52,280 nt of DNA from Octopus sinensis (Eukaryota): NCBI RefSeq assembly GCF_006345805.1, contig NW_021833970.1, forward strand, positions 1 through 52,280. Direction: 5' to 3'. The translations under genes were made by a program, and so were the position numbers. Below, piece by piece: positions 1-46,521 of the stretch. Within the stretch, counting starts at the first letter, position 1, and each line of letters starts with the position of its first letter. The notes beneath the pieces are model-generated. The model did no database searches. It saw nothing but the letters and a program-made list of their open reading frames with translations, and had not been told where the DNA came from.

Positions 1-35
1 AAATGACACCAACGAGATTTCCTTCTATAGATTAA
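1..35 (+). CDS. Paralogue A exon 1, 3' end (5' part outside window)
   Basis: Frame from nt 2 reads NDTNEISFYRL, matching the exon-1 ends of C (NDTNEISFYK) and D. The family GTAAGT donor is altered; GT at 36-37 keeps phase 1. Confidence 0.75.
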   Translation, partial: MTPTRFPSID

Positions 36-62
36 GTGAAGCATTCTTCTTTTCTTCTTCTT

Positions 63-137
<75 letters not shown>

Positions 138-662
138 GAGTGAGAGAGCAGTTCATGCCATCAAAGTGACACTGGGGTAAAATATACGAAGCCCAATATA
201 CCCATCATGACTACCCATCTGATAAGGGTACACCAGGCACATGCATCACAACCATATGCGCGCGACATGGTGATATCATATCAAGATAAACAGCACATGA
301 CCTTGCAGGTGGGACCTAGTTAGAATTTTCTTCGGGTTGGGTAGCCCATCCCGCTCAAAAGGTCCCTGAATAAGGGTGTCTAAGGATGTTGAAAGAATCA
401 CCCATGTTTCCAGAGGTCAATTATTCAAACCCCAAAGAATCCCTCTCAACACATGGCTATGATGCTCCCCACTACTTCTGCTCGTGATCAGAGATGCACA
501 TATCGTCAGCCACTAAGGGACATGCTCAACTGGTTAAGTCAAACAACTGACAGCAAATCTGTGGTATTGAGCAGAATATTTGCTGTAGCCCATCTTTTAT
601 AACAAGACAAAACAATGTACTGATAACACTTCCAATCAGTTAAGATCAGAAGCCATGAGAGC
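138..662. mobile_element. Interspersed repeat flanked by (TTA)n, in intron 1 of A
   Basis: Reverse complement of 16097-16757; same position relative to the exon-1 donor in A and B. Confidence 0.75.
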
Positions 663-705
<43 letters not shown>

Positions 706-709
<4 letters not shown>

Positions 710-1229
710 TAGTTTTATTTTTTTTTATAGCGTGCTTTCACTTCACTAGCGAGCGCAGCTCTGTGTGCCTTGGGTATGTGCTGTGATTGTTGTGATGCTC
801 TGATGGTTATTGTATGGAAAGTGTTCTGCGTAGGATGTGTGCAGTGCCTAGTAGTGCAATTTTCTGTATGTTATATGTGTTTGTAAGTCCTGGTGTTTTG
901 TTATGTATTTGTCTGAATATTTTTTTATCATGCCTAATGCACCTACTATGATAGGAATTGTTTCTGTTTTCAGATTCCACATTCTAGTTACCTCTATTTC
1001 CAGGTCTTTGTATTTTGAGAGTTTCTCCATTTCTTTTAGAGACACGTTGTCATCTGCCGGTACTGATACATCAATTAGAAAGCATTTTTTTCTTCATGGT
1101 CTCTGACAACTATATCTGGTCTGTTGGCCTTAATTTCTCTATCTGTGTGTATCGGCATATCCCAGAGTATGGTTGCTTTCTCGTTTTCTGTGAACTTTTC
1201 TGGTGTGTGCCTATACCATCTTTTTTCTG

Positions 1230-1235
<6 letters not shown>
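706..1235 (-). mobile_element. Dong/R4-like LINE, 3' fragment (restriction-like endonuclease region)
   Basis: Encodes MSLKEMEKLSKYKDLEIEVTRMWNLKTETIPII, nearly identical to 40764-41198; (TAA)n on both sides. Confidence 0.85.
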
Positions 1236-4409: not shown

Positions 4410-4994
4410 TTGTGGTGTGGTGTGAGCGAGCATGAGTGCGTGTATGTCTACAGTGATAGATCCGAGTGTTTCATTTATTCACAATTTGATTTATTAATTT
4501 CACCGGACTATGAATACCTATAATGGTGCCTACGCAGTCGTCCACACTCATCACTGCCCTTATCAGTGGTTACAGGGAAATGATTGCGGAGTCCCTTTTT
4601 GCCTTCTGCTTTTCCTTGTCCTTTTTTGTATTTCTTCCTTTGTTTTGCCGTTTTTTTCTCGGCTTTCAATACTCCCTCAGTCATAACTGCCACTAGCAAG
4701 CTTTCCTCGCTTTAGCATATCTGTCTCATCAAGTTCCCGAGTTCGATACCTACGCAGTCTTCCACACTTATCAGTACCCTTCCTCCATTTGCCCTCTTCG
4801 TGTAGAGACGATCAGTGTCTGCACGTGGATGATGGCCTCCATGCATCATTAGACGCTTCCTTGTCTTCCTGTCCAACTCTTATCTCTCCTCCTCTGTTCA
4901 GTGAAGGATCCCAGCGCCATACCGAACTACTGCGGCTGCGCATAAGTTCATGGCCGAAATTATGTTCCAGGTATTCAGCTTTGAAGCCAATACT

Positions 4995-5032
4995 ATTACT
5001 ACTGCTGCTGCTATTACTACTACTACTACTAT

Positions 5033-5095
<63 letters not shown>

Positions 5096-5133
5096 ACCTG
5101 CTCCTACCACTACTACTACTACTGCTGCTGTTG

Positions 5134-5195
<62 letters not shown>

Positions 5196-5365
5196 GCTAC
5201 TACTACTGCTACTGCTGCTGCTACTACTACTGCTACTACTGCTGCTGCTGCTACTGCTGCTACTGCAGATGCTACTACAACTACTACTACTGCTATTACT
5301 ACTACTACTACTACTACTACTACTGCTGCTACTACAACTACTACTACTACTACTACTACTACTAT
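4995..5365. repeat. (ACT)n/(GCT)n microsatellite abutting the A exon-2 acceptor
   Basis: Seen directly. Confidence 0.95.
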
Positions 5366-5379
5366 GATTATTATTTCAG

Positions 5380-5558
5380 ACAGCCAATGGATTAAAGCAT
5401 ATGCGATATCAATGAATGCTGGTTCGAGAGTCTATGAGTCATACATGAATATAGGAAATACTTCATCCTGGAAAGTGGACAAATGCAATGGTACCTTCTG
5501 TCCTAACTTCTTCCGACATCCCTTCCTTGATTTCTGGGAACATCTTCCAATTGATGAG
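5380..5558 (+). CDS. Paralogue A exon 2
   Basis: tttcag|...GAG|gtacgt, 179 bp, phase 1/0. Encodes SQWIKAYAISMNAGSRVYESYMNIGNTSSWKVDKCNGTFCPNFFRHPFLDFWEHLPIDE; 44/59 identical to C exon 2. Confidence 0.9.
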
Positions 5559-5611
5559 GTACGTAGCCGTATGCATACACATACACTAATATACATATAA
5601 TAATAGTAATA

Positions 5612-5883: not shown

Positions 5884-7498
5884 GTGTCGTAGCTACCGTT
5901 TATAACACGCTCTAAGATTTATTATTAATAGTAATAATGATTAACAGATATTTAGATCAATTCAATTGTTTGTTACATTTTTGACCTACAAAAATGATTT
6001 ATGAGGAAGGCGAAACAGTGTTGAATAAAATTCTATCCGCGGAAAACCGCAGTAATAAGAAAAGATTATCATAGATTAAAGAATCTCCTTTTGGGGTTTG
6101 ATGAGTAAATGGGAAACAAAATCGATGAAATCAGTTTACGATTCATGACTGGTAAAAGTTTTATTGAGCTCGGCAGAAAGTAAAGCATGTGGACCTCGGT
6201 GGTACTTGGATTCAAAGCTGAATTAGTTTGTCATTCTTCTTGTGAGATGGCAAGATTGAGTAACAAACAAAACCTTGTTGGAACAGACGAATCAGGGACC
6301 TGTCAGAGCCCAGATCAAGAGCAGCCATGGATCATGGCTAGTTCAAAATTGAAATTTATTTCGTCACTGTATTTATTGCGGAGATGTGTCAATTCATAGA
6401 ATGTTTTACTCTAGATATTTCGTGTTTTCATCCACAATGGAGACGAACACCCTCCTTCCAGGTAATCGGCTTGGAAAATTGTTGACATATTAAGACATTC
6501 GCCCCTAAATGAAACTAATAATAGCCTTAATACACAAAGGGAGAAATTTTAATCAACAATGCGGTTTTGAGCGAAATACATGACCTCAGCCTGAGGTTAG
6601 CTCATCATTTTTCGGTCATTTATTTATATTCAAAAATTGCCGCTTTAAAATCGGAGATTAAATATCATTATGATATATATTATATAGAGTTATTGTACAG
6701 TTATTATACTATGAGCCTTCCATAGTAGCTTTCTCTCCGTAACTCGCAAAGCCTTTCGGGTTTACTCTTTTACTCTTTTGCATTGGTTGTCAAGAAATGC
6801 TAGGGGAACAAACACAGACATACAACCACAAACACACACACACACATATATATACATATTTACGACGGGCTTCTTTCAGTTTCCGTCTACCAAATCCAGT
6901 CACAAGGCTTTGGTCGGCCCGAGGCTATAGTAGAAGACACTTGCCCAAGATGCCACGCAGTGGGACCGAACCCGGAACCATGTGGTTGGTAAGCAAGCTA
7001 CTTACCACACAGCCACTCCTGAGCCTATATTCCTGGTATCATTACAGTAAAATCCGTAATATCCATGTACACCAGGTGAAACTTTGTTTACGTCACATAT
7101 ATGACATATATATACATATACATCTGTGTGCGTGAAAAACGTATATATATATATATATATAAATATATATTATATATATATATATTATATATATATATAT
7201 TATGTGGGGGGGGGTGTAATAGAGCTAAAAACGGATGGATTATTTGGGTATAACGACACACGTTTCCTTTCCAGAATATTGTTATTATAAACACATTATG
7301 TCATGCAACATGGAATGGAATAGCTTTGAGATCGTATGTAATACTATGAAATAAGTTTGAATAACATTACCAATTCTGTAGGTCATACTGTATTAGAGGT
7401 TAATTAGCGATGTATACCACATAGTATCATGGTAATATAGGAATTTTTCAAGTGAAGGGGTATCAAATATGTTATTTGATTCATTTAGAGATATTAAT

Positions 7499-8495
7499 CG
7501 TCTGGAAGCCGTTCAGCGACGTGCAACCGAGAGAATACCCTCCATCAGGCATTTGCCATATTCTGAACGCCTTACTTCCCTGGGCATGGACACATTGAAA
7601 CTCCAACGTCTGGCAGCTGACTTGGCAGACACCCATAAAATTATTACCCATCTTACTAACAATAACTCTGAGCACCCTTTCAAACTCTACCTGTCTAACA
7701 CCCGTGGACATTTCATTTCATTTCATTTGAGTTTGAGACCATGCTCAGGCCAAGTCGAAGACTCCACCCTCAGAGTCTGGTGTGGTTGCCAGGTTGTATT
7801 CTCTGTTTAATTTTGACATGTGTAGGAGCGAGTTTGAGTCAGTTTGTGCTCGTTGTGTATATCCTGGGAGATGGGGTTCATCTCTAATGGTGCTTAAGTA
7901 TCTATCCAGCTGCAATTTGAATGATTCCACACTGCATCCTAATAGATTTATGATATGTACTGGAATGGAGTTGAATAGTTGTGCTCCTCGAACCAACAGA
8001 CTTGATTCTCGCAGGGTTTTTGCTGCCTGGCCAGCCTTTTTGTTGATTGGTGGTAGCTGGCAGCGTCTTCCGAGGCGCAGTGAGTGGTAGGTTTTGATAC
8101 CAAAGTTTGGCACATTTTGCTCTATCATTTTCCAAATGTATATAATTCGGTATCGCTCAAATCTTCTTTCTATTGAGTACATCCTCAAGGTTTTGAGTCT
8201 TTGCCAATAGTCCAGGTCCTTCGTTTCTGAGAAGTATGAGGTAAAATTTCTTTGGAGCGATTCCATCTTAGATAGTTGGCCCTTTGTTGTTGGTGACCAC
8301 AACTGAGAACAGTAGTCAATCCTCGGAAGTATCATACTGTTCCAGAGGGTTTTCATTGTTGAGGTATCTCTTGATTTGAAGGTGCGCAAGATCCACCCGC
8401 TGACATATTTACAAAGTCAGAATATAGCACAGCTCCCATGAATTTCGGAAACATTTTTTCACGCTGACAGTTGCTGAAGCATGGAACAGACTGTG
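7499..8495. mobile_element. CR1-like LINE fragment (+) interrupted by a second CR1-like LINE 3' fragment (-, ~7714-8400)
   Basis: Outer element: INRLEAVQRRATERIPSIRHLPYSERL...NTRGH, resuming at ~8400 (KHFFTLTVAEAWNRL). Inner element: ILPRIDYCSQLWSP...ESLQRNFT with a (TGAAA)n tail. Confidence 0.85.
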
Positions 8496-8740: not shown

Positions 8741-8895
8741 GTAAAACTGGTAATCTATAAAAACGGAACCGATTCGAAAACAATCATATTTGATGGACGA
8801 AATACAACCCTTAAAACCTGGTTCTCTCACGAAAACTTGAAAAGTTCACCATGGGACGACCTAGCTTCCGACCCCAGACCTAAGTTTTTAATGGA
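8741..8895 (+). CDS. Paralogue A exon 3
   Basis: ttttgcag|GTA...ATG GA|gtgagt, 155 bp, phase 0/2. Encodes VKLVIYKNGTDSKTIIFDGRNTTLKTWFSHENLKSSPWDDLASDPRPKFLM; homologous to B and C exon 3. Confidence 0.9.
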
Positions 8896-10014: not shown

Positions 10015-10100
10015 CTTGGGCAAGTGTCTTCTACTATAGCCTCGGGCTGACCAAAGCCTTCTGAGTGGATTTGGTAGACGGAAACTGAAAGAAACCCGTC

Positions 10101-10132
<32 letters not shown>

Positions 10133-10350
10133 CTGTATGTTTGTCTGTGTTTGTCCCCCCAACATCGCTTGACAAAAGATGCTGGTGTGTTTACGTTCCC
10201 GTAACTTAGCGGTTCGGCAAAAGAGACAGATAGAATAAGTACTAGGCTTACAAAGAATAAGTTCTGGGGTTGATTTGCTTGACTAAAGGTGGTGCTCCAG
10301 CATCGCCGCAGTCAAAATAACTGAAACAAGTAAAAGAGTAAAAGAGTAAA
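10015..10350 (+). mobile_element. Abundant SINE-like repeat with internal (TG)n
   Basis: Core GGGCAAGTGTCTTCTACTATAGCC...GGAAACTGAAAG; other copies at ~6830-7020, 31680-32100, 42365-42780 and 45610-45990. Confidence 0.8.
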
Positions 10351-10401: not shown

Positions 10402-10562
10402 CAACAATCGTCCCTTCGTTTTATCAAAACCGGGTAATTGTAACACGATGAGTGGCTGGTTCATTGTTGATGCCCGTCCGCCAATTTGTTCGTTTGGTTA
10501 CAAAGATCATTCTCCTTCAATCCGTTATTCTGATAAAAAATTGAAAGTCGTCTGGAAGAAAG
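10402..10562 (+). CDS. Paralogue A exon 4
   Basis: ctccacag|C...AAA G|gtaagt, 161 bp, phase 2/1. Encodes NNRPFVLSKPGNCNTMSGWFIVDARPPICSFGYKDHSPSIRYSDKKLKVVWKK; same length and phase as B and C exon 4. Confidence 0.85.
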
Positions 10563-10837: not shown

Positions 10838-10887
10838 GTTATGCATTAGCAGACTCCATGGCCATATTCATCCGCCTGAGGGAGTAG
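10838..10887 (+). CDS. Paralogue A exon 5 (terminal)
   Basis: cttgcag|GT TAT...GAG TAG, 50 bp. Encodes (G)YALADSMAIFIRLRE*; matches C exon 5. Confidence 0.85.
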
Positions 10888-11100: not shown

Positions 11101-11853
11101 AAAGTCCGTCTTTCGAGTTGTGATTGGCTTTCTCTGACCCCACAGACAGAGCTGTTGTTGTTGTTGTTGTTGTTTATGTTCTAGTTCATACTAAATGCTT
11201 TGCACCTTAGGTAAGTGTCTTCTACCAAAGCCTTGTGAGTGGATTTCGTAGGCGGGAACCGAAAGAAACATGTCGTATGTGTGTGTGTGTGTGTGTGGAA
11301 GCGCAATGGACCATTTGTTCAGGCAGCTGACTCGCGGTTGTAGGATCGCGGTTTCGATTCCCAGACCGGGCTTTTTGAGTGTTTATTGAGCGAAAACACC
11401 TAAAGCTCCACGAGGCTCCAGCAGGGGGGTGGTGGCGGTCCCTGCTGTACTCTTTCGCTGCAACTTTCTCTTACTCTTTCGTCTGTTGGCCTGCTCGCTT
11501 AGCCAGCGGGGGTGGCGTCATTTGAAGGCTAAAACAATGCAAAGCACATTGTGACCAGCGATGTGTAGCAACATCTGATATCTTGGTCGGTCACGGTGAC
11601 CACGGTGAAATCTCTGAACGAAGTATAAACAGTAACTGCCCGATAACGTGAGGTATATTTGCCATCTCAATATGGCTAACCACTAAGAGTGGGTGTTACT
11701 GTAGCTTATAGCCCCAGGAGAACATCTACTCCAGCTGGCTTTAGGCACCCTTTCTGTGCCCTTAATGAATTTGCACACAACAATTCCACTATTACTACTC
11801 ACAGTAAGACACACACACACACACACACACACAAAAGAGAAAACATCACTTAC

Positions 11854-12014
11854 CGTCGTTCCATACGATTTTCATTTTTGTGTCAGAATAACGGATTGAA
11901 GGAGAATGATCTTTGTAACGAAACGAATAAGATGGCGGAAGCTCATCGATAACCAGCCAGCCGCTTACTTTTGTACTTGTGTTGCCTTTTGTTATATAGA
12001 AGCTATATTTTCAT
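11854..12014 (-). pseudogene. Paralogue B exon 4 with in-frame stop
   Basis: ttcacag|A TGA AAA TAT...GAC G|gtaagt, 161 bp. TGA at 12013-12011, then KYSFYITKGNTSTKVSGWLVIDELPPSYSFRYKDHSPSIRYSDTKMKIVWND. Confidence 0.8.
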
Positions 12015-12244: not shown

Positions 12245-12408
12245 TTATTTAGCTCCACTGAGAAACGCAATTTTGTGGCTGAAGCTAGATCGTCCCATGG
12301 TGAACTTTTCAAATTTTCCTGAGAGAACCAGGTTTTAAGGGTTGTATTTCGTCCATCAAATATCATAGTTACCACATCTGTTTGGTTTTCGTAGAGCACC
12401 AGTTTCAC
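12245..12408 (-). pseudogene. Paralogue B exon 3
   Basis: cttctgcag|GTG...AAT AA|gtat, 164 bp. Encodes VKLVLYENQTDVVTMIFDGRNTTLKTWFSQENLKSSPWDDLASATKLRFSVELN; open, with splice sites intact. Confidence 0.85.
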
Positions 12409-14020: not shown

Positions 14021-14650
14021 AGAGCTAATCATCATATCTATAAAAGAGTGGATGTGTGCGCGCGCGTGTGTGTGTGTGTGTGTGTGCACATGATTGTAAT
14101 TTACGCACATCCACAAATTAGCACGCATGTCGCTCAAATTTTAGGAGGACATTTGTCAACATCCTATCTGGGTTTTGTCAACTTATGTTTTTCCCGAGGC
14201 ACCCGCGGATAGGGTGAAAATCTATTTTCAACCATTTTCAACCAGTTGTCCCCAGGTGTAGTCGTCTGTTACTTCTTCATTTTCTGTTGACATTTTCCAT
14301 GTTGTTTTCCATCCGTGACGCTTCTGTCTCCCTTGGTATATATCCTTTGGATGGTTTGTCTGGTAAAATCAGAAAGAGGTTTTCAAGCGATGTGTCCTAG
14401 CTAACCTCATTTTCTGCTCTTGATCTGGGCTCTGACAGGTTCCTGGTTCGTCTGTTCCCACAAGGTTTTGTTTGTTACTCAATCTTGCCATCTCCCAAGA
14501 AGAATGACAAACTAATTCGGCTTTGAATCCAAGTACCACCGAGGTCCACATGCTTTACTTCCTGCCGAGCTCAATAAAACTTTTACCAGTCATGTATCGT
14601 AAGCTGATTTCATCGACTTTGTTTCCCATTTACTCATCAAACCCCAAAAG

Positions 14651-15654: not shown

Positions 15655-15793
15655 ATGTATGATAATAATGATAATAATAATGATAATAATAATAATAATA
15701 CTGATAATAATAATAATGATAATGATAACAACAACAACAACAACAATAATAATAATAATAATAATGAAAATAATAATAATAATAATAATGATG

Positions 15794-15824
<31 letters not shown>

Positions 15825-15967: not shown

Positions 15968-16049
<82 letters not shown>

Positions 16050-16061
16050 TATAATAATAAT

Positions 16062-24505: not shown

Positions 24506-24827
24506 ATGTCCCATTTTACCCGTCCATCTGTTACGAGAGCGCTGTTGTTGACCCTTACAACAATTCTGACCGTTACCTCAGGTCAGGAACTTGAGGCCTA
24601 CTACAAAGCTTTGGATCCTGGTTATTCTTATGGTTATCTTCAGGCAAATCCATCGGAAAAATTCTATAAGAGAAAAAGTCTACTGGGATGTGCCGGCATC
24701 GCTCTAAGCAGCCAATCAGAATTCTTTACTTACAACAAAGTCAGCCATGTTTGTAAGAATTACTCACCGAAAAATATAATGACAGTCGTCAGCACGAATG
24801 ACACCAACGAGATTTCATTCTATAAAA
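24506..24827 (+). CDS. Paralogue C exon 1: signal peptide + PAN/apple-like domain
   Basis: ATG after caaga as in D; MSHFTRPSVTRALLLTLTTILTVTSG...SFYK A|gtaaga, 322 bp. In-frame upstream ATGs at 24479 and 24494 are possible alternatives. Confidence 0.9.
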
Positions 24828-28453: not shown

Positions 28454-28632
28454 ACAGCCAATGGATCAAAGCATATGCCCTGTCAATGGGCGCTGGTACC
28501 GACGTCTATCATTCATTTATAAATAAAGGAGATTCTTCAACCTGGAACGTGGACAAATGCAATGGTGCCTTTTGTCCTAACTTCTTCCGACATCCTATTC
28601 TCGATTTCTGGAGTCATCTTCCAATTGATGAG
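28454..28632 (+). CDS. Paralogue C exon 2
   Basis: tttcag|AC...GAG|gtacgt, 179 bp. Encodes SQWIKAYALSMGAGTDVYHSFINKGDSSTWNVDKCNGAFCPNFFRHPILDFWSHLPIDE. Confidence 0.92.
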
Positions 28633-29833: not shown

Positions 29834-29994
29834 GTGAAACTAGTGGTTTATAAAAACCAAACAGCTGTAGCTAATATCGTGTTCGATGGACGTAATACAA
29901 CCCTTGAAAGCTGGTTTTCTCATGAAAAGTTGAAAAGTTCTCATTGGACCGACTTAACTCAAAGCCATGTGGCTTACTTCTCACTCGGACAGAA
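29834..29994 (+). CDS. Paralogue C exon 3
   Basis: tttttag|GTG...CAG AA|gtaatt, 161 bp. Encodes VKLVVYKNQTAVANIVFDGRNTTLESWFSHEKLKSSHWTDLTQSHVAYFSLGQ. Confidence 0.9.
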
Positions 29995-31315: not shown

Positions 31316-31476
31316 TTGGGGACGTCGTTTCTACGTGTGGTCTTACGAAGAAAGTTGTGAAACAGATATGGGTTGGATGGCTATTACTCAAATGAGTTGG
31401 TGTGACTGGGAGAAGAATCTTCCTTTGCCGACAATACTCTACTCAGGGAAAAGTTCGACAACCACATTTAATGAAG
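31316..31476 (+). CDS. Paralogue C exon 4
   Basis: ttacag|T TGG...GAA G|gtaagt, 161 bp. Encodes WGRRFYVWSYEESCETDMGWMAITQMSWCDWEKNLPLPTILYSGKSSTTTFNE. Confidence 0.88.
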
Positions 31477-33931: not shown

Positions 33932-33981
33932 GTTTGGAAATAGGTGATTCCATGGCCATCTTCATCCGCCTAAAACCTTAA
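33932..33981 (+). CDS. Paralogue C exon 5 (terminal)
   Basis: tttttcag|GT TTG...CCT TAA. Encodes (G)LEIGDSMAIFIRLKP*. Spliced CDS 322+179+161+161+50 = 873 nt = 290 aa + stop, with no internal stop. Confidence 0.88.
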
Positions 33982-35724: not shown

Positions 35725-36232
35725 TAAAATATTACAATTAACCTGAAGATTGACTGTAACCATAACACGAATTATTAATTGAATTTAAATTATTCTTATT
35801 CGAATTGGTTACGGGCATGAAACGATCGTAGTGTTTTTACTCTTTATCTTATTAAACTTTTAATACTTTTTGATAGTTTGTAAAAAATAAATAGATAGAT
35901 AAATAAATAAATATAAAAATATAAAAATATGACAAATATAAAAAATATAAAAATGTATAAAAAAATAATAAATAAGAAAATAAAAAATAAAAAATTAAAA
36001 AGAAGTAGGTATTTCGTCTGCCGTTACGTTCTGAATACAAATTCCGCCGGGGTCGACTTTGCCTTTCGTCCTTTCGGGGTCGATTAAATACGCCGAGCTC
36101 AATAAAAAACCTTAACCAGTCATGTATCGTAAATTAGTTTCATCCATCGATTTTGTTTCCTGTTTACTCGTCAATTCCAAAAAGGAGAGTCTTTTGTTTA
36201 TCCTATAGTCTATTAATACATTGTGAACGTAC

Positions 36233-36411
36233 CTCTTCGATGGGAAGATCGCTCCAGAAATCGAGAATAGGATTTCGGAAGAAGTTAGGACAAAAGGTAT
36301 CGACGCATTTCTCTACTTCCCAGGTTGAAGGACTTCCTATATTCATAAATGATTCATAGACTTTCGAACCAGCTCCCATTGATAGGGCATATGCTTTGAT
36401 CCATTGACTGT
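36233..36411 (-). pseudogene. Paralogue D exon 2
   Basis: tttcag|AC AGT CAA...GAG|gtacgt, 179 bp, open. Encodes SQWIKAYALSMGAGSKVYESFMNIGSPSTWEVEKCVDTFCPNFFRNPILDFWSDLPIEE. Confidence 0.85.
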
Positions 36412-36414
36412 CTG

Positions 36415-36415
36415 A

Positions 36416-36477
<62 letters not shown>

Positions 36478-36668
36478 GAATAATGATGATGATCATAATA
36501 ACAATAATAATAATAATCATACTAATAATAATGATGATGAAAATAATAATAATAATAATAATAACAACAACAACAATAATAATGATGATATTAATAATAA
36601 TAATAATAAGAAGAAGAATGATGATGATAATAATAATAATAATAATAATAATGATGGTGATGATGATG

Positions 36669-36708
<40 letters not shown>

Positions 36709-36742
36709 GAAGAATAATAATAATGATGATAATAATAGTAAA

Positions 36743-36780
<38 letters not shown>

Positions 36781-36785
36781 TGATG

Positions 36786-36816
<31 letters not shown>

Positions 36817-36893
36817 TGATGATGATAATAATAATAATAATATTGATGATGATAATAATAATAATAATGATAACAATAATAAAGATGATGATG

Positions 36894-36931
<38 letters not shown>

Positions 36932-37126
36932 CATAATAACAATAATGATGATGATAATAATAATAATAATAACAATAACAACAACAACAATAATAATAAT
37001 AATAATTATGATGATGATAATAATAGAAATAATAATAATGATGATGATAATAATAATAATAATAATAGTGATGATGATAATAATAATTAAAAATAAAAAA
37101 TAATAATAATAATAATAATAAGGATG

Positions 37127-37157
<31 letters not shown>

Positions 37158-37159
37158 TG

Positions 37160-37190
<31 letters not shown>

Positions 37191-37281
37191 TGGAGATGAT
37201 AATAATAATAATAATGATAATAATGATGATAATATTAATAATAATAATAATAATAATAATGATAATAATAATGATGATAAT

Positions 37282-37328
<47 letters not shown>

Positions 37329-37351
37329 GAATAATAATGATGATAATAATG

Positions 37352-37433
<82 letters not shown>

Positions 37434-37465
37434 TATTAATGATAATAATAATAATAATAATAAAA
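36415..37465. repeat. (AAT/GAT)n microsatellite abutting the D exon-2 acceptor
   Basis: Seen directly. Confidence 0.95.
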
Positions 37466-37479
37466 AGTAATGCTCATTA

Positions 37480-40400
37480 AAATTTATTTTCGAAACGAAA
37501 TGATGTATTTTGACTCGATATCATCTCCACCTCTAACACAACACATGTAAACATGCGTGTTACATTACGATCCATCCACACCAGATCATCCCCGACCCCA
37601 AACACCATGTACAAAGGAACTACGAAGAAATTAAATACCACCGATATTATTCAACCCAAAAATAACAATCGGGAGGTACGTACCTTAAGCTTACAACACA
37701 AAATGTACGAAAAACTACACGTGCAAAACAATGTGACAACAGAAATGAACGGACCGGTACCCTACGAAAATGACGACCGTCAAAATAATGGGCCGGACGT
37801 TGTTCCTCATGTCCCGCAGATAAAACCCAAAAGACATAAATGGACACGTAAGGAATACATTTCTATCCTACACGCATACTTCACAGCAGTGCTCTACCCC
37901 AAAAATGTAAAACACAACAACACATACATATAAAATATGGAAGAAAAATAACATAAATATAGACTTGGATACAGCAATGAACCCTAATAAAATAGCTAAC
38001 GTACGAAGATACATTCTCAAAAAAAAAAAATCAGAAATAGAAATAGAACATCTAAAAGAAAAAAATACACCAGGAAAATGTAGATAGAAGCCACACAGCG
38101 ATGCCCATTAATATAACACTGAAACAATAAAACACGATGACAAACGTAACATTCCCAACAAAAACGATATAAATAAAAACAACAAACCCAGACCGTAAAA
38201 ATCCATAATAATACACGACAAACAGCAAGCCAAAACACGACAAACAAACATATAAATAAGAAAGAAAGCGACACAAATCTAAAACCTAGAGACAACAAGG
38301 GGGAGCCTAATGATTATGATAATATAAAAAGTAAAATAATCAAAGAACTGAAAACCACAGAGCTCAAAATGGACCACCGACCATATCTCCCAAAAATCAA
38401 AATATACGAAACAACAACACCAATTATAAACAGCATAAACCTAGCCTTCACTGAACTAATAGCCACTGAAACAAAAAGCGATATCACTAAGCTAAATTAC
38501 TTAGTTTACGCAGCAGCCACTGCATCCACAAAAGAAGCTGGATACTCACTCAAACCCATCCAAACAGGAGTACCACAACCCAAACAAACCCTGTGGATAA
38601 ATAACATCCAAAACAAAATACAAAAAATGAGAAAAGATCTGTCGATTCTTAATGAAATCAGTAGACAATCAACGCTACTGAGCAACAAAAGAAAACAAAA
38701 ATACTCCGCAAATATAACATCACAGAAAAAGATTTACCTGAGATAAAAGAAAAGCTGAAGCAAGATATCCTTGCCAAAGCACAAAGGATCCGCCGGTACG
38801 AGAAACGCCAGCGCTTCTTTGAACAAGACAAAAAGTTCAACTCCAACCACAAAAAGTTCTACCAAGTACTTGGCAAAAATAAAAATAAAATAGAAATCAC
38901 TGCAGCACCAACGGCAGAAGAAGTGGAAGAATTCTGGAGAGAAATATGGTCGACGAACGAACAACAAAAAGAAGAAGTATCAAACAACAAACTCAGCATC
39001 TGAGCAACTTTGGACCCCCATAACAACTGAAGAGGTCACCCAGGCACTGCAAAGACTAAGCAACTGGAAGGCACCTGGGCATGACAAGATCCCCAACTTC
39101 TGGTTGAAATATCTAACAGGAATGCACAAAAAGCTGGCTGAAAACTTTAACAGCATGCTAGCAGAGCCAGAGACAATGCCTGAATGGCTCACGAAGGGGA
39201 AAACCATCTTAATTCCCAAATCAAATGAGACAGCAAAACCAGAAAACTACAGACCAATAACCTGTCTCCCTACAATATAGAAGGCACTTACTGCAGTGAT
39301 ATCGCAAAGGTTAAACAAGCACTTGGACGAAAACAGCCTGTTTCCAGAAGAGCAGATATGATGCCGCAAAGGCTTATATGGCTGTAAAGATCGACTAATG
39401 ATTAATAAAGCCATAACTAAAGACAGCCACAGAAAGAAGAAAGGCCTCAGTATGGCCTGGATCGATTACAAAAAGGCGTTTGATAGCATCCCCCACACAT
39501 GGATCCTCGAAACACTAGCCATTAACAAAGTAGCACCAACCCTTATAAAATTCACAGGGCACTCTATGAATAAATGGCAAACCGTACTACAGCTCCAAAC
39601 AAAAGAGGGACTCATGAAAACCAAAGCTATCACCATTAGAAGAGGTATATTCCAGGGAGACACTCTCTCTCCACTCCTTTTCTGCTTGGCACTGTCACCT
39701 CTATCTGATATGCTAAATAGAATTGGATGCGGATATAAATGTTACGGCAAAACGATCAGCCACCTTTTATATATGGATGACCTAAAACTATACGCTGCAA
39801 ATGACAAACAGCTGGAAACACTATTAAAGACAGTTCATGGATTTACCAAAGAAATAGAAATGAAATTTGGATTAGAAAAATGCGCCAAAGTAACCATGAA
39901 AAGAGGAAAACTAGTTAAGAGTAGCAACATCACACTAGATAAAACCAATGAAATAAAAGAATTAGACCAAAGCCAAACTTACAAATACTTAGGAATCCAT
40001 GAACTAGATAAGACACAACACACACAAATGAAAGAGAAAATAAAAAAAGAATATTATAGACGAGTTAGATCAATACTAAAAACAGAGCTCAATGCTAAAA
40101 ACAAGATAATAGGTATTAACACTTTAGCTGTCCCAGTTATAAGTTACAGCTACAATATCCTTAACTGGACACTAAATGAACTGACCAAAATAGATAGGAA
40201 AACAAGAAAAATAATGACAGGGTCTAGGATGCATCACCCAAAATCTTACATAGAAAGACAATATATATACAACGTATAGAAGGTGGTAGAGGCCTTATAC
40301 AACTGGATAACTACTATAAAATAACCACCATAGGACTTCAAAAATATCTACTTCAGAAGGAAGGGAAAACTGATACACATAACGGCAAAACACGAGCAAA

Positions 40401-41296
40401 ACAAAAAACTGTTCTCAGTATTTAAGGAAGCTGACATATACAAAGAAGAAATCATACCACCTAACAAATATGAAGAAGAAGAAGAAGAAGAAGAAGAAGA
40501 AGAAGAAGAAGAAGAAGAAGAAGAAGAAGAAGAAGAAGAAGAAGAAGAAGAAGAAGAAGAAAATGAAGAAACAACAAAAGCTATAAAACAAATGAAATCC
40601 AAACTAAAAACAGAACAGCAACGAACCATGATAAAACGATGGCAAGAAAAGCCCCTTCATGGTAAATACTGGACTAAACTAAACGCAAAAGAAATAGACA
40701 AAGAAAAATCCCAGCAATGGTTGAGAAGCTCAGTACTCAAAAGAGAGACAGAGGGATTTTTAATTGCAGCACAAGACCAAAAGTTGGTGTAGGCACACAC
40801 CAGAAAAGGTCACAGAAAACGAGAAAGCAACCATACTCTGGGATATGCCGATACACACAGATAGAGAAATTAAGGCCAACAGACCAGATATAGTTGTCAG
40901 AGATCATGAAGAAAAAAAATGCTTTCTAATTGATGTATCAATACCGGCAGATGACAACGTGTCTCTAAAAGAAATGGAGAAACTTTCAATATACAAATAC
41001 CTGGAAATAGAGGTAACCAGAATGTGGAATCTAAAAACAGAAACAATTCCTATCATAGTATGTGCATTAGGTATGATAAAAAAATATTCAGACATATACA
41101 TAACAAAAATGCCAGGACTTACAAACACATATAACATACAGAAAATTGCACTACTAGGCACTGCACACATCCTACCCAGAACGCTTTCCATACAATAACC
41201 ATCAGAGCATCACAACAAATCACAGCACATACCTAAGGCACACAGAGCTGCGCTCGGTAGTGAAGTGAAAGCACGCTATAAAAATAAAACTACTGA
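37480..41296 (+). mobile_element. Near full-length Dong/R4-clade non-LTR retrotransposon (frameshifted)
   Basis: N-terminal KRHKWTRKEY; RT motifs WIDYKKAFDSIPH, GIFQGDTLSPLLF, HLLYMDDLKLYA; endonuclease ILWDMPIHTDREIKANRPDIVV...IDVSIP; (TAA)n on both sides. Confidence 0.92.
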
Positions 41297-42210: not shown

Positions 42211-44531
42211 GGATCCTAGAAATAGTAGCCATGAACAAAATAGCGCCTATAATCATAAAATATAGAAAATATTCCATGAATAAATGGTAGACAGTGCCAC
42301 AACTCCAGGCAAAAGAGGGACTCATAAAACCCAAAGCCATCCCTATTTGAAGAGGAATATTCGAGGCGCAGGTGTGGCTGTGTGGTTAGTAGCTTGCTAA
42401 CCAGCCACATGGTTCCGGGTTCAGTGTCACTGCGTGGCATCTTGGACAAGTGTCTTCTGCTATAGCCCCGGGCCGACCAATGCTTTGTGAATGGATTTGG
42501 TAGATGGAAACTGAAAGAAGCCCGTCGCATATATGTATATATATATATATATGTGTGTGTGTATGTGTTTGTGTGTCTGTGTTTGTCCCCCTAGCGTTGC
42601 TTGACGAATTGTGCTGGTGTGTTTACGTCCCCGTCACTTAGCGGTTCGGCAAAAGAGACCGATAGAAGAAGTACTGGGCTTACAAAGAATAAGTCCCGGG
42701 GTCGAGTTGCTCGACTAAAGGCGGTGCTCCAGCATGGCCGCAGTCAAATTACTGAAACAAGTAAAAGAGTAAATAGAGTAGACACACTCTCTCCCCTCTT
42801 TTTCTGCTAGCTAATGATAACTTTATTCGACATGCTAAACAAAACTGGATGTGGATACAATTGTTACCGCAAAACAATCAGCCGTCTCTTATATACGGGT
42901 ATTCTAAAACTGTACGCTACAAATGATAAGCAGCTGGAAACATTACTACAGAATGTACATGGAATTACCAAAGAAATAAACATGAAATTTTGCTTACAAA
43001 AATGTGCTAAAGCCACCTTGAAACGAGGAAGACTAGTTAAGAGTAGCAACATCAGACTAGATACAGCAAAGGAAATAAGAAAATCAGACAAAATCCAGAC
43101 ATACAGATATTTAGGAATCAATGAACTACACTTGCGTCGGAAATTAATTAGCACTTCTGAAATTTCTACATTTTCTTACATTTTCTTAATTTAATTAACT
43201 TATTATCAGAAACGAACTCGTTTTTAATCAAAAATTTATTAAAACATATCCCAGCACACCACATAATTGTTATTAATCGTGAAATTTAGTCAATATCTTG
43301 TTGCTCCTCCTTTGACAGCAATGACAGCTGCTACGCGGGTCGGCATGCTGTCTATGAGTGCCTGCAGGTACTGTGCAGGGATGGACCCCCATGCAGCAAG
43401 AAGTGCCCCAAACAGCTCGTGTCGGTTCCTGTATTGTTGCACATTCAAATCCCTACCCAATCGACTCCAGAGGTTCTTAATAGGGTTCAGGTCAGGTGAC
43501 TGGCCAGGCCAGTCCATGACCGTCACCCCATGGTCCTTGAAGAAACCGGTTGTGAGCTTGGCTGTGTGGGAAGGCGCGTTGTCCTGCTGGAGCACGTACT
43601 CCTCGCCACCAAAGAGGTATCCCGTACTATCTCAACGTACTTTGCTGCGTTGATGTTGCCTTCGACGGCATAGAGCCGCCCAACACCACTGTAGCTGAAC
43701 GCCCCTCACACCATCAGACTACCCCCACCATGCTTCATGGTGGGAGCAATGCAGTCTTTGTTGAAGCGTTCACCCCTGCGGCGTCGCACATGGACAGTCT
43801 TGTCACTGACGAGACTGAATCGCGACTCGTCAGTGAACATCACTGTCCGCCACTGCTGCACGGTCCATGTCTTGTGGGCACGGGCCCAGAGCAGCCGCCT
43901 CTTCCGGTTTTGGGCTGTAAGGAGCGGCTTACGGGTGGCCCTACAGCTTCCAGTAATCTGGTCTTGACGGTGGTTGTAGACAACTGCTTCCCTGTCATCT
44001 TTTGCATCTCCTCCGCCAGTTGCCGGCTCGTTGCCCTTCGGTTGTACAGTGACTTTCGGATCAGCATCCGGTCCTCCCGCTGGGTCGTCAGCCTCTTCCG
44101 TCCCCTACCCTTTTTGTCAGCTGCTGATCCGGTTTCCTCGTATTTCTTAAATAAGCACTGAGATGAGAAAACTTAGTACGGTGTGATTTCGGTCCTTGCG
44201 AGGCGCTACCTATATCTATTAAACAAAGGAAGATTTGTCTGCATCCGCACTCCAAGTTGTTGTTGCACTGCTATGTCAACATCATTAGGCTGTAGACTCT
44301 CAAACTGCTCTGCAAACAAAGTTACGTCATCGTTCTGCGCAACAGTGAACTCGCAACAAAGCAATAGTTCGAGATATGGCCACTAGGTGACAGCAAATAC
44401 CTTGAGTGAAGAGCAAATCAAGGGTGCTAATTAATTTCTGACGGTAGTGTAGATACGATACAATACGCACAAATGAAAGAGAACATAAGAAAAGAATACT
44501 ATAGATGAGTTAGATTATTACTGAAAACAGA
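42210..44531 (+). mobile_element. Old Dong/R4-like RT fragment split by a SINE (42365-42780) and a Tc1 element
   Basis: RT-like sequence at 42210-42364, 42781-43128 and 44450-44531 is collinear with 39499-40090. Confidence 0.8.
43129..44449 (-). mobile_element. Tc1-like DNA transposon, 1321 bp, defective transposase
   Basis: TA duplication at 43127-43128 and 44450-44451; imperfect TIRs CACT..CGTC.GAAATTAATTAGCAC; QQDNAPSHTA...WPGQSPDLNPIKNLW. Confidence 0.92.
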
Positions 44532-44649
44532 TGAGGTTCGATTCATATGAAACAGAAAGTGAACACAATGAAATACTTATAGAAAATGTTCAAGTGATAG
44601 CACAGGACGAACGTGATGTACGCGTTAGCTAACTCTGCACGACCTGTCA

Positions 44650-45570
44650 TAGATAGCTTTCCCTCAGCCCATTTCTGGGTGACAGTAGTGATCCTGCCCG
44701 TTTCCTCGTCCTAGTTTTGGTCCATCTGGGGGTCTGGAAGAAACCAGACAACAACCAGTTTAACCGGTTCGTTCATCCGGGGCCCAATCATGCTGATGGA
44801 CAGCATGGACTTGTTTCTGCAGGTGCCAATCCGCAAGCCCATTGATTTTTACTGATTAATCATCGCCCCTGAAACCACCTGGTTGTCCCTGAAAGTGGTG
44901 CCGATCATTTCTATATATTCATGATCCGACACCACCAAGATGACGTCATTGGCATATGCCGACATGCATCTCCCACATCCTAGGGCACGCAGAATACAAC
45001 TCAACGCCTCCAGATTGTGTAGTAATGGCTCGAGAAGTAGTACATACAAGAGAGACGGGAGAGGTCAACCATGCCTAATCAGGCGCATGATGTTGAACGG
45101 TTCTGAGAGGTGACCGCTCACTCTGACCACTGAACAGATGTGAACTGCGGCAATCCAGCCCTTGAACACAGGCTCGAAACCAACTGCCCTGAAGACGGTC
45201 GCCCGGTATAAATGGTCGACCCTATCAAAAGCGTGTATGTACGGACTCTTAAGCCATTAATACCCACTCTGGAAGCGTTGACATGCATCACGCGTAACCT
45301 AGGTTGTGGGAGATACGTGTCGGCATATGCCAACGACATCACCGTAAAGGTTTCGGATCATAAGCACATAGAAATTGATCAGGGATCCACCCGTGCCAGT
45401 CTCTCTAGCCACTTTCTCAAAGATATATCGCATGAGGTGGAGGTTGTCGGAGATGGATCTGTTCGGGATGGCGCATATCTTTGCCTCTACTACCAGATCA
45501 CCGACGACGACGGCCAAACTCGTAGCTACTACTTTGTGCAAAATTTTGAAATCTGCATTTATATAAGCTA
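44650..45570 (-). mobile_element. Tx1/L1-like LINE RT fragment with an inverted internal insert
   Basis: AIPNRSISDNLHLMRYIFEKV, FDRVDH, LYVLLLEPLL and SAYANDV motifs. Confidence 0.75.
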
Positions 45571-45790
45571 CCTTATCTATGTGCTGCTTATATGGCAAAT
45601 TAAATGACTAAAAGTAGCTTGAATACCAACAGCATGGTTCCGGGTTCAGTACCACAGCGTGGCACCTTGGGAAAATCTCTTCTACTATAGCCTCGGACCA
45701 ACCAACTCCTTGTGAGTGGATTTCATAGACGTAACCTGAAAGAAGCCCGTCGTATGTAGAAATATATATATATATGCGTGTGTGGGGGAG

Positions 45791-45821
<31 letters not shown>

Positions 45822-46193
45822 CTTTGTCCCCCACCATCGCTTGACGAACTTGAGGTTCGGCAAAAAGAGACCGATAGAATATGTACTAGGCTGAAAGACA
45901 ATAAATCCAGGGGGCGATTTGTTCGACTAAAGGCGGAGCTCCAGCATGGCCGCAGTCAAATGACTGAAACAAATAAAAAAAGAATAAAAGAATAAATAGG
46001 CTTCACTTACTTCAATAGAAGGAACAACAAAGATAATATTGATCTCAATTTTTGGCACAAGGCCAGCAATTACATGAGGAGAAGAGTTAGTCAATTTCAT
46101 TGACTCCACTTTTCATCTGGTAATTATATCTACTCGGAGGAAGAATCAATAATAAATAGTAATAGTAATTATAACAAAAAAAGTTTCACTTAC

Positions 46194-46521
46194 TTTTATA
46201 GAATGAAATCTCGTTGGTGTCATTCGTGCTGACGATTGCCATTATATTCTTCGGTGAGTAATTCTTACAAACACGACTCACTTTGTTGTAAGTAAAGAAT
46301 TCTGATTGGCTGCTTAGAGCGAGGCCGGCACATTCCAGCAGACTTCGTGTTGAATAGGATATTTCCGATGGTGATGACTGAAGGTAACCATAAGAGTAGC
46401 CAAGAGGCAAACGTTCGTAGCTTGCTTCACGTTCCTGATCTGAGCTAACAACCAGAATGGTTGCAAGAGTTAACAGAAGCACTGTTATCACAGCAGGATG
46501 GGTAAAAGGAAACCGGGACAT
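46194..46521 (-). pseudogene. Paralogue D exon 1: signal peptide + PAN/apple-like domain (3'-truncated copy)
   Basis: MSRFPFTHPAVITVLLLTLATILVVSS...SFYK A|gtaagt, 328 bp, open. Status depends on exons 3-5, which I did not find. Confidence 0.8.

What the first reader, a model, noticed from the sequence alone, without database searches (positions are those of the whole stretch)
1..46521. Four-copy inverted cluster of an uncharacterised secreted PAN-like + unnamed-domain protein family
Seen: four paralogues share one exon architecture (phases 1-0-2-1; exon 2 always 179 bp, exon 4 always 161 bp) and are arranged A> <B C> <D. None of the spliced products appears in the ORF track. C encodes signal peptide + PAN/apple-like module + a domain with the pattern QW.KAY...C....C.NFFR.P.LD.W...VKLV.Y...FDG......WFS...L.SS.W.DL...F....C....GW......C......P.I.YS....DSMAIFI. 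From memory, similar unannotated domains occur in mollusc and cnidarian proteomes and may be fibrinogen-like in fold. Inference: a diversifying secreted recognition or effector family (immune, mucus or gland) undergoing birth-and-death evolution.
Basis: partly seen in the sequence, partly recalled or inferred. Interest (0 to 1): 0.8.

Follow-up and report, generated by a model that had tools for sequence, protein, structure and literature searches.

The report
Octopus secreted PAN-domain gene cluster
This octopus scaffold carries two intact genes and two decayed copies of a secreted protein family that joins a PAN/apple domain to a widespread animal domain with no database model, solved structure or known function.

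Summary
The window is Octopus sinensis unplaced scaffold VCDQ01006013.1.

"Four paralogues with one architecture" is only partly true.
- C is complete.
- A is intact but loses its 5' end at the scaffold edge.
- B is a pseudogene: exons 2 and 5 deleted, TGA in exon 4, both exon-4 cysteines lost.
- D is a stub of exons 1-2.

The same layout exists on an O. vulgaris chromosome, so it is not an assembly artefact.

The N-terminal module is a PAN/apple domain that has lost one cysteine pair. The ~185 aa C-terminal domain matches no Pfam, NCBIfam or PDB sequence. Yet it occurs in 1,066 protein clusters from corals, brachiopods, molluscs, echinoderms, hemichordates and amphioxus, and in two prokaryote-source proteins. 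A confident AlphaFold model (pLDDT 90.8) retrieves almost only fibrinogen-related domains, but below significance, and profile-profile comparison is negative.

Birth-and-death evolution is supported. Diversifying selection is only suggested: ω is 0.4-0.5 for old pairs, about 1 for a young pair, and 1.7 (not significant) in exon 4.

The function, most likely a secreted lectin-like binder, is inferred and not shown.

The parts
1..35 (+). Gene A, last 35 nt of exon 1 (coding from position 2); the rest lies beyond the scaffold end
   Evidence: tblastn, HMM scan and direct reading; GT donor at 36-37
5380..5558 (+). Gene A exon 2 (179 bp)
   Evidence: AG/GT borders; 82.7 % nt identity to C exon 2
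8741..8895 (+). Gene A exon 3 (155 bp)
   Evidence: AG/GT borders
10402..10562 (+). Gene A exon 4 (161 bp), both cysteines kept
10838..10887 (+). Gene A exon 5 (50 bp) with stop codon
   Evidence: Open reading frame through exons 2-5
11854..12014 (-). Pseudogene B exon 4 (161 bp): TGA at 12013-12011 replaces the conserved Trp codon, and both conserved cysteines are lost
11765..11809 (-). Pseudogene B: junction of a ~3.5 kb deletion that removed exon 5
   Evidence: L003:17113-20609, which contains exon 5, has no counterpart in the window
12245..12408 (-). Pseudogene B exon 3 (164 bp); NCBI's LOC118761633 model uses it as its last exon
14647..14650 (-). Pseudogene B: junction of a ~1.4 kb deletion that removed exon 2
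   Evidence: A:4566-4666 and A:6088-6324 abut here at 96-97 % identity
16783..17113 (-). Pseudogene B exon 1 (331 bp). The ORF is intact in O. sinensis; the O. vulgaris orthologue has a 1-nt insertion
24506..24827 (+). Gene C exon 1: signal peptide plus PAN/apple module
28454..28632 (+). Gene C exon 2 (179 bp): start of the C-terminal domain
29834..29994 (+). Gene C exon 3 (161 bp)
31316..31476 (+). Gene C exon 4 (161 bp): the Cys-bounded, most variable segment of the family
33932..33981 (+). Gene C exon 5 with stop codon
36233..36411 (-). Remnant D exon 2 (179 bp). Homology to the other copies ends at 36092, and no exons 3-5 follow
46194..46521 (-). Remnant D exon 1 (328 bp), intact ORF

Best explanation
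The window is part of an octopod-specific, tandemly and invertedly duplicated gene family of about 28 annotated loci in O. sinensis. Each gene encodes a ~30 kDa secreted glycoprotein: a signal peptide, a PAN/apple domain that keeps one cysteine pair and has lost the other, and a ~185 aa cysteine-stabilised, mostly beta domain.

That second domain has no Pfam, NCBIfam or PDB representative, but it is widespread in invertebrate deuterostomes, lophotrochozoans and cnidarians. It is probably a very distant relative of fibrinogen-related domains that lacks their N-terminal A-subdomain.

Only C (complete) and A (truncated by the scaffold end) are intact here. B and D are decayed copies. The family evolves by segmental duplication of tail-to-tail gene pairs, patchy gene conversion, deletion and pseudogenisation. 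Amino-acid change is concentrated in exon 4.

Inferred mechanism, not shown: the proteins are soluble extracellular binding (lectin-like recognition) molecules. The PAN module and the variable Cys-bounded segment of the C-terminal domain would contact glycan or protein ligands.
For: Gene models and decay:
- Exon structure, splice sites and ORFs.
- B deletions and the D truncation.
- The layout is orthologous and 96-99 % identical on O. vulgaris chromosome OX597841.1.

Family size and spread:
- All close relatives are octopods (Octopus species and Argonauta).

PAN module:
- Profile A4 hits solved apple domains: Toxoplasma MIC4 at E = 4e-10, microneme antigen L2 at 4e-4, factor XI at about 0.006-0.01.
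- Paralogue P0065 keeps the four-cysteine pattern, which aligns residue for residue with the family's two-cysteine version.
- A PAN domain followed by this domain is also found in a bivalve (PAN_1 just below Pfam's cut-off) and in two crinoid proteins above it.

C-terminal domain:
- 1,066 representative clusters at E <= 1e-3 and 632 at E <= 1e-10. Taxa.
- Partner domains are all extracellular lectin or adhesion modules: C-type lectin, F5/8C, SUEL, Sushi, TSP1, ZP, EGF.
- The AF2 model has pLDDT 90.8 and pTM 0.88. At least 35 of its top 50 PDB matches are FReDs aligned over about 200 columns.
- In two prokaryote-source proteins, one annotated Myxococcota, a FReD HMM and the domain HMM overlap on the same GGGWT strand. 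The first 46 aa match NCBIfam GGGWT_bact at E = 2e-20.

Secretory features.

Evolution:
- ω is 0.4-0.5 for old pairs, and dS is about three times higher in exons 3-5 than in exons 1-2.
- The young pair A/A' has ω 1.07, with 1.70 in exon 4.
- Exon 4 is the least conserved region: 0.44 mean pairwise identity against 0.62-0.69 elsewhere.
Against: - No expression, ligand or tissue data were obtainable, so the function is pure inference.
- The FReD relationship is not established. The best Foldseek match is E = 0.055 with TM 0.35-0.40. hhalign against a FReD alignment gives 0.07 % probability, although that FReD profile is shallow. There is no Pfam Fibrinogen_C hit even at E <= 10.
- The GGGWT module might simply be fused to an unrelated body in the prokaryote-source proteins.
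- Positive selection is not statistically supported (Fisher p = 0.6).
- The N-terminal module was modelled poorly by AF2 (pLDDT below 50).
- Pfam PAN_3 scores 17 bits, below its 21.1-bit cut-off.
Confidence: 0.55

Rival explanations
1. The proteins are structural components of an apical extracellular matrix, mucus, egg coat or cuticle rather than recognition molecules. PAN and the second domain would act as polymerisation or matrix-binding modules.
For: The C-terminal domain co-occurs with ZP-N/ZP-C, EGF, Sushi, TSP1 and D8C(UMOD) domains in amphioxus and echinoderm proteins. From general knowledge, PAN plus ZP is a typical apical-matrix combination.
Against: The octopus proteins are small two-domain proteins with no polymerisation module. 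Rapid turnover, pseudogenes and a variable Cys-bounded segment are more typical of recognition families. Other partner domains are lectins: C-type, SUEL and discoidin.
Confidence: 0.25
2. The minus strand holds one real 34 kb gene (NCBI LOC118761633: D exon 1, D exon 2, then the exon 3 at 12408-12245), with gene C nested in its intron 2. On this reading there are three genes, not four.
For: NCBI's 242 aa model P0018 joins exactly these exons. The phases are compatible, and the composite reads open through exon 3.
Against: Exons B1, B3 and B4 are collinear, at 88-96 % identity, with a single intact five-exon gene (P0009) on scaffold VCDQ01005972.1, so they belong together. The NCBI model ends by reading into the intron. 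Exon 4 has a stop codon. Other NCBI models in this family are clearly chimeric, spanning 243 kb and 101 kb.
Confidence: 0.1
3. The irregular copies are artefacts of a small, unplaced and possibly mis-assembled or haplotig scaffold. On the real chromosome all four genes would be complete.
For: The window is an unplaced 52 kb scaffold. Another unplaced scaffold carries a similar A/B block.
Against: The chromosome-level O. vulgaris assembly is collinear with window 14.8-36.2 kb at 96-99 % identity. It shows the same gap of about 2.3 kb between C's stop and D exon 2, and a B exon 1 that is also damaged. The other scaffold is only 88-96 % identical, which is too divergent for an allele.
Confidence: 0.05
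4. The family encodes salivary-gland or venom effectors aimed at prey.
For: The proteins are small, secreted, cysteine-containing and rapidly duplicating, with ω near 1 in a young pair.
Against: There is no similarity to any known toxin family. The domain is widespread in non-venomous filter feeders and corals, within large matrix-type proteins. No expression data exist.
Confidence: 0.05

Closest known systems
PAN/apple domains (Pfam PAN_1/PAN_3; apple domains of factor XI and plasma kallikrein; Toxoplasma MIC4)
   Same: The N-terminal module aligns to solved apple domains (E = 4e-10 to 0.01). It keeps the helix cysteine, the FTYN strand and the following cysteine. A more distant octopus paralogue keeps all four core cysteines.
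   Different: The family in this window has replaced the inner cysteine pair with Ala and Ser. Pfam scores stay below the gathering threshold.
Fibrinogen-related domains (ficolins, angiopoietins, tenascins, invertebrate FREPs)
   Same: The domain size is comparable, the setting is extracellular, and the family is multigenic. FReDs dominate the Foldseek ranking of a confident model. Both have a Cys...GW...Cys loop near the C-terminus and end on a hydrophobic beta-strand. In the prokaryote-source relatives the domain starts with a true FReD A-subdomain and GGGWT strand.
   Different: The octopus and other animal versions have no A-subdomain. The family consensus shows no FReD-type acidic Ca2+-site cluster; the FReD motif itself is recalled from general knowledge. 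There is no HMM or profile-profile similarity. TM-scores of 0.35-0.40 are below the same-fold level.
Intelectins / X-type lectins
   Same: They are the precedent for a short FReD-like start followed by a strongly divergent lectin body. The prokaryote-source unit aligns furthest with intelectin-1 (residues 1-101, E = 0.02).
   Different: hhalign of the domain profile against verified human intelectin-1 gives 0.15 % probability. Intelectins are not among the top 50 Foldseek hits.
Expanded invertebrate immune-lectin families (snail FREPs, bivalve C1q and C-type lectin repertoires)
   Same: All show lineage-specific tandem expansion, pseudogenes, gene conversion, and variability concentrated in one segment.
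   Different: The domain combination is different. No immune expression, no somatic diversification and no ligand are known for the octopus family.

Membership tests
PAN/apple domain | Significant profile match to recognised PAN/apple domains | tested here: met
   Profile A4 (octopus modules plus four bridging relatives) hits MIC4 apple domains at E = 4.4e-10, 2yil at 4e-4 and factor XI apple domains at about 0.006-0.01. Caveats: the octopus-only full-length profile gave no PAN hit, and Pfam PAN_3 reaches only 17 bits against a 21.1-bit cut-off.
PAN/apple domain | Conserved core cysteine pattern (two disulfides) | tested here: inconclusive
   The window family keeps only the outer pair (C62 and C83 in C). 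The inner pair is Ala and Ser. Paralogue P0065 keeps all four, in register.
PAN/apple domain | Alpha/beta fold: one helix packed on an antiparallel sheet | tested here: inconclusive
   The AF2 secondary-structure order (beta-beta-alpha-beta-beta-beta-beta) is compatible, but pLDDT is below 50 for residues 1-130.
Fibrinogen-related domain (Pfam Fibrinogen_C) | HMM match to Fibrinogen_C or to solved FReD sequences | tested here: not met
   No Pfam hit at E <= 10 for C, for 20 octopus members or for 32 diverse members. No PDB sequence hit with either profile.
Fibrinogen-related domain (Pfam Fibrinogen_C) | Profile-profile similarity | tested here: not met
   hhalign of A2 against FReD alignment A3 gives probability 0.07 % and E = 0.72. 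The FReD profile was shallow (Neff 2.2), so sensitivity was limited.
Fibrinogen-related domain (Pfam Fibrinogen_C) | Same three-dimensional fold | tested here: inconclusive
   FReDs make up at least 35 of the top 50 Foldseek hits over about 200 columns. However, the best is E = 0.055, probability 0.60, TM 0.35-0.40 and rmsd 8-9 Å.
Fibrinogen-related domain (Pfam Fibrinogen_C) | N-terminal A-subdomain with the CDM..GGGWT motif | tested here: not met
   Absent from the octopus and other animal versions. Present only in the prokaryote-source relatives.
Intelectin / X-type lectin | Sequence-profile similarity to intelectin-1 | tested here: not met
   hhalign probability is 0.15 %. The intelectin sequence was verified against 4WMQ.
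Birth-and-death multigene family | Clustered paralogues, lineage-specific expansion, pseudogenes and segmental duplicates | tested here: met
   About 28 annotated O. sinensis loci, all in octopods. There are two pseudogene remnants in the window. A paralogous A/B block lies on another scaffold.
Birth-and-death multigene family | Positive (diversifying) selection on a binding surface | tested here: inconclusive
   ω is 0.4-0.5 for old pairs. For the young pair it is 1.07 overall and 1.70 in exon 4, with Fisher p = 0.6. Exon 4 is the most variable region.

The most novel reading that the evidence does not exclude
The ~185 aa C-terminal domain is an unrecognised third branch of the fibrinogen-related superfamily, alongside canonical FReDs and intelectins. 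It is ancient: it occurs in prokaryote-source proteins with the GGGWT A-subdomain and in animals without it. On this reading it works as a glycan-binding recognition module, and octopods have expanded a PAN-linked version into a private repertoire of soluble pattern-recognition proteins whose specificity is set by the variable Cys-bounded loop encoded by exon 4.
Probability: 0.3. Interest if true: 0.65.

Novelty: new variant of a known kind. Interest (0 to 1): 0.45.

Why it matters
A domain found in more than a thousand protein clusters across at least seven animal phyla has no Pfam or NCBIfam model, no solved structure and no known function. It also occurs in two prokaryote-source proteins. 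Defining it would let hundreds of "uncharacterized" invertebrate proteins be annotated.

If the link to fibrinogen-related domains holds, the history of this major innate-immunity fold extends to a new branch. The octopus cluster is a compact system for study: two intact genes, two dated pseudogenes and a young duplicate pair. It could show how cephalopods, which lack the large FREP, C1q and C-type lectin expansions reported in other molluscs, might build recognition diversity.

If the proteins turn out to be ordinary matrix components, the finding is still a useful family definition, but it is not surprising.

Tried and rejected
- Pfam on C, on 20 octopus members and on 32 diverse domain members found no model for the C-terminal domain.
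- DUF7922 scored above its cut-off in one amphioxus protein with four copies of the domain. It hit none of the 32 aligned domain members, so I rejected it as the domain's model.
- NCBIfam found nothing for the animal proteins.
- PDB sequence searches with the octopus profile and with the broad profile gave only a chance hit or nothing.
- The first AF2 model, built on octopus sequences only, was poor (pLDDT 54.6), and its Foldseek hits were meaningless.
- The viral fold library gave nothing significant.
- The second word-index homology search with the broad alignment added only Argonauta and one scallop protein.
- The third, seeded with the ficolin-2 FReD, listed only mammalian ficolins. The FReD profile for hhalign therefore had to be supplemented with PDB-verified angiopoietin-2 and fibrinogen-γ sequences, and it remained shallow.
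- hhalign against FReD and against intelectin was negative in both cases.
- Five literature searches by topic, LOC number and UniProt accession returned nothing relevant.
I did not pursue these by other means, so transcript evidence could not be examined.
- My first ω estimate for exons 4-5 of the young pair used an exon boundary that was off by one base. It was corrected.

Full report
**Identity of the window.** The window is a eukaryotic sequence with 37 % G+C. A protein search with the spliced C product returned only Octopus proteins. One of them, P0018 (LOC118761633), lies on a contig of exactly 52,280 bp. The contig look-up identifies the window as VCDQ01006013.1 of the O. sinensis assembly GCA_006345805.1. 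NCBI calls two genes on it. The other is a 242 aa product spanning 12187-46521 on the minus strand.

**Checking the observation.** The five C exons have canonical AG/GT borders and join into an 873 nt complete ORF with intron phases 1-0-2-1. I searched for all family exons with a family HMM over all six frames and with blastn at word size 7. Both methods agree on the counts:
- exon 1 occurs four times (A tail, B, C, D);
- exons 2, 3 and 4 occur three times each;
- exon 5 occurs twice.

Gene A reads open through its whole visible part: 2-35, 5380-5558, 8741-8895, 10402-10562 and 10838-10887. On the minus strand there are only five family exons:
- D exon 1 (46521-46194);
- D exon 2 (36411-36233);
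- B exon 1 (17113-16783);
- an exon 3 (12408-12245, 164 bp);
- an exon 4 (12014-11854, 161 bp).

In that exon 4 the conserved Trp codon is TGA and both conserved cysteines are replaced. So 179 bp for exon 2 and 161 bp for exon 4 hold wherever those exons exist, but the window does not contain four complete paralogues.

**What happened to B and D.** Pairwise blastn of the gene-oriented segments shows that B's intron 1 is 96-97 % identical to A's. A:4666 and A:6088 abut at B:~14648, so a 1.4 kb deletion removed B's exon 2 and the microsatellite in front of it.

A second unplaced scaffold (L003, VCDQ01005972.1) carries an intact five-exon gene, P0009. Its exons 1, 3 and 4 match B1, B3 and B4, and it lies tail-to-tail with an A-like gene. 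The whole block is collinear with the window's A/B region at 88-96 % identity. Against that template, B has also lost about 3.5 kb containing exon 5, with the junction at window 11809→11765.

B is therefore one decayed gene. NCBI's model, which joins D1 and D2 to B3 and then reads into the intron, is a chimera. Other models in this family are equally stretched, at 243 kb and 101 kb.

D's similarity to the other copies stops at 36092, about 140 bp into intron 2. The remaining 2.1 kb down to C's stop codon holds no family exon.

**This is not an assembly artefact.** The orthologous region of O. vulgaris chromosome OX597841.1 (L002) is collinear with window 14.8-36.2 kb at 96-99 % identity. It has the same order, B1(-), C(+), D2(-), and the same gap of about 2.3 kb after C. 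Its B1 carries a 1-nt insertion. Past D2 the two assemblies differ: O. vulgaris has an inverted intron-1-like segment followed by a plus-strand exon 2.

**The protein: N-terminus.** C begins with a charged stretch, a 12-residue hydrophobic core (ALLLTLTTILTV) and small residues before Gln26. It has no later hydrophobic segment, six cysteines and four N-glycosylation sequons, and the mature protein is 30.4 kDa. These are signal-peptide features read from the sequence; no predictor was available.

The next ~85 residues are a PAN/apple domain. Pfam PAN_3 hits 4 of 20 family members, but below threshold. The more distant octopus paralogue P0065 has the classical pattern C-x3-C-x4-C...C. The window family aligns to it in register, with the two inner cysteines replaced by Ala and Ser. 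A profile of these modules hits solved apple domains: MIC4 at E = 4.4e-10, 2yil at 4e-4, and factor XI at about 0.006-0.01.

**The protein: C-terminal domain.** This part is encoded by exons 2-5. It has no Pfam hit at E <= 10 in C, in 20 octopus members or in 32 diverse members. It has no NCBIfam hit and no PDB sequence hit with either a narrow or a broad profile.

It is nevertheless widespread. An exhaustive HMM search of 1.84 billion representatives found 1,066 clusters at E <= 1e-3 and 632 at E <= 1e-10. The sampled sources are:
- cephalochordates: Branchiostoma;
- echinoderms: the crinoids Anneissia and Antedon, and the starfish Acanthaster;
- hemichordates: Ptychodera;
- molluscs: Pomacea, Aplysia, Mytilus, Mya, Mercenaria, unionid mussels, Mizuhopecten, the chiton Liolophura, and Argonauta;
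- brachiopods: Lingula;
- cnidarians: the coral Oculina;
- two prokaryote-source proteins: one annotated as a Myxococcota bacterium and one unnamed ENA metagenome protein.

Nearly all are named "uncharacterized". The domain occurs singly or in 2-4 copies. Its partner domains are PAN, F5/8 type C, C-type lectin, SUEL lectin, Sushi, TSP1, EGF, ZP and D8C. This is a purely extracellular, lectin and adhesion context. A PAN domain followed by this domain also occurs in two crinoid proteins above Pfam's cut-off, and in a unionid bivalve just below it. The octopus architecture is therefore old, and the expansion is what is octopod-specific.

**Is it fibrinogen-like?** With the broad alignment, AlphaFold2 gave a confident model of the domain (pLDDT 90.8, pTM 0.88). 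Foldseek against the PDB returned almost only fibrinogen-related domains at the top: ANGPTL3 and ANGPTL6, L- and M-ficolin, fibrinogen beta and gamma, FGL1, tenascins and MFAP4. They align over about 200 columns. No hit reaches E <= 1e-3. The best is E = 0.055 with probability 0.60, TM 0.35-0.40 and rmsd 8-9 Å.

I built a FReD alignment from ficolins plus angiopoietin-2 and fibrinogen-γ sequences, which I verified against 1Z3S and 3FIB. hhalign against the domain profile gave 0.07 % probability. The only segment it aligned was W.LVFR..G.G..VY..W against GGWTVFQRR.DGSVDF.R.W.

The best positive evidence comes from the two prokaryote-source proteins. In these, a FReD HMM covers the A-subdomain and the CDM..GGGWT strand (for example P0091 1795-1858). 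The domain HMM then starts on that same strand and continues for 190 residues (1836-2024, E = 1e-43). The first 46 residues match NCBIfam GGGWT_bact (E = 2e-20). They also match solved FReDs (MFAP4 at 3e-5) and, weakly but over a longer stretch, intelectin-1. hhalign against verified intelectin-1 is also negative.

My reading is that a remote relationship to FReDs, with loss of the A-subdomain in animals, is plausible but unproven. By sequence criteria the domain is not a member of Fibrinogen_C.

**Evolution.**
- Nei-Gojobori ω is 0.4-0.5 between A, C and the B/D pieces. dS is about 0.3 in exons 1-2 but 1.0-1.2 in exons 3-5, which indicates a mosaic history.
- Several intron segments are 95-97 % identical between copies whose exons are only 76-83 % identical.
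- The C orthologues of O. sinensis and O. vulgaris are identical in exons 1, 2, 4 and 5. They differ at 8 clustered nucleotides in exon 3. There the O. vulgaris sequence resembles another O. vulgaris paralogue. Both patterns point to patchy gene conversion.
- For the young intact pair, window A against the A-like gene on L003, ω is 1.07 overall and 1.70 in exon 4 (21.5 non-synonymous against 3.5 synonymous changes). The counts are small (Fisher p = 0.6).
- Across 15 full-length octopus proteins, exon 4 is the least conserved part, with mean pairwise identity 0.44 against 0.62-0.69 elsewhere.

Birth-and-death evolution is shown. Diversifying selection is suggested but not shown.

**Function.** Nothing here measures function, and no paper mentions these loci. 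Several features point the same way:
- secretion signals;
- a PAN module;
- lectin-type partner domains in relatives;
- conserved tryptophans;
- a variable Cys-bounded segment;
- rapid gene turnover.

From these I infer soluble extracellular binding proteins, most likely lectin-like recognition molecules. A matrix or mucus role is the main rival.

**Verdict.** This is a real, partly mis-described gene cluster from an uncharacterized family. The gene-C model and the domain description are right. The four-intact-copies claim is wrong. The fold and selection claims are only weakly supported. The most useful outcome is the definition of a widespread animal domain that the family libraries searched here do not model.

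Noticed in passing
window 4991-5364, 27387-28449, 36416-37463 (also 15662-16098 in B's intron 1): Trinucleotide microsatellites of 0.4-1 kb (TAC, TAT, AAT) abut the exon 2 acceptor in A, C and D. They create long poly-Ile, poly-Leu or poly-Thr pseudo-ORFs that run into exon 2 (for example ORFs 4950-5600 and 36203-36934). B keeps a similar microsatellite in its intron 1, but the one that abuts exon 2 in A went with the 1.4 kb deletion.
   Followed up: partly
window 39398-40279 (+), with 40764-41198 (+) and 7745-8389 (-): The first ORF is a retroelement reverse transcriptase (Pfam RVT_1, E = 1e-21) inside D's intron 1. The other two ORFs, in D's intron 1 and A's intron 2, have no Pfam hit.
   Followed up: partly
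window 6780-7030, 10015-10350, 31894-32098, 42364-42780, 45612-45990; many copies in L003: A dispersed repeat of about 250-400 bp occurs at least five times in the window in both orientations, and at least six times in L003, at 73-92 % identity. It is probably a SINE- or MITE-like element and was not classified.
   Followed up: no
window 10926-11105; L003:21963-22621: A 94 bp unit lies between the 3' ends of A and B. It is present in 1.9 copies here but about seven copies in the paralogous block on scaffold VCDQ01005972.1.
   Followed up: no
L002:21912-26945 (O. vulgaris OX597841.1): Beyond D exon 2 the O. vulgaris chromosome is not collinear with the window. A segment 90-94 % identical to D's intron 1 lies in inverted orientation and is followed by a plus-strand exon 2 at 26733-26945 that has no counterpart in the window.
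   Followed up: partly
window 29834-29994 (C exon 3) vs L002:14686-14846: C is 100 % identical between O. sinensis and O. vulgaris in exons 1, 2, 4 and 5 but has 8 clustered differences in exon 3 (TQSHVAYFSLGQ against TQRNEASFSIGQ). A second O. vulgaris paralogue has TQPNEASFSIGQ there, which suggests a gene-conversion patch.
   Followed up: partly
P0082 (Myxococcota bacterium, 2194 aa) and P0091 (unnamed ENA metagenome protein, 2257 aa): These large prokaryote-source proteins have TIG or FG-GAP repeats and end in 2-3 units of GGGWT module plus the animal-type domain. Whether this reflects an ancient origin or horizontal transfer was not examined.
   Followed up: partly
NCBI and O. vulgaris gene models P0001, P0010, P0018, P0027: Automatic gene models in this family often stitch exons of neighbouring paralogues across 34-243 kb, with other family genes nested inside. 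Family counts taken from annotation are therefore unreliable.
   Followed up: partly
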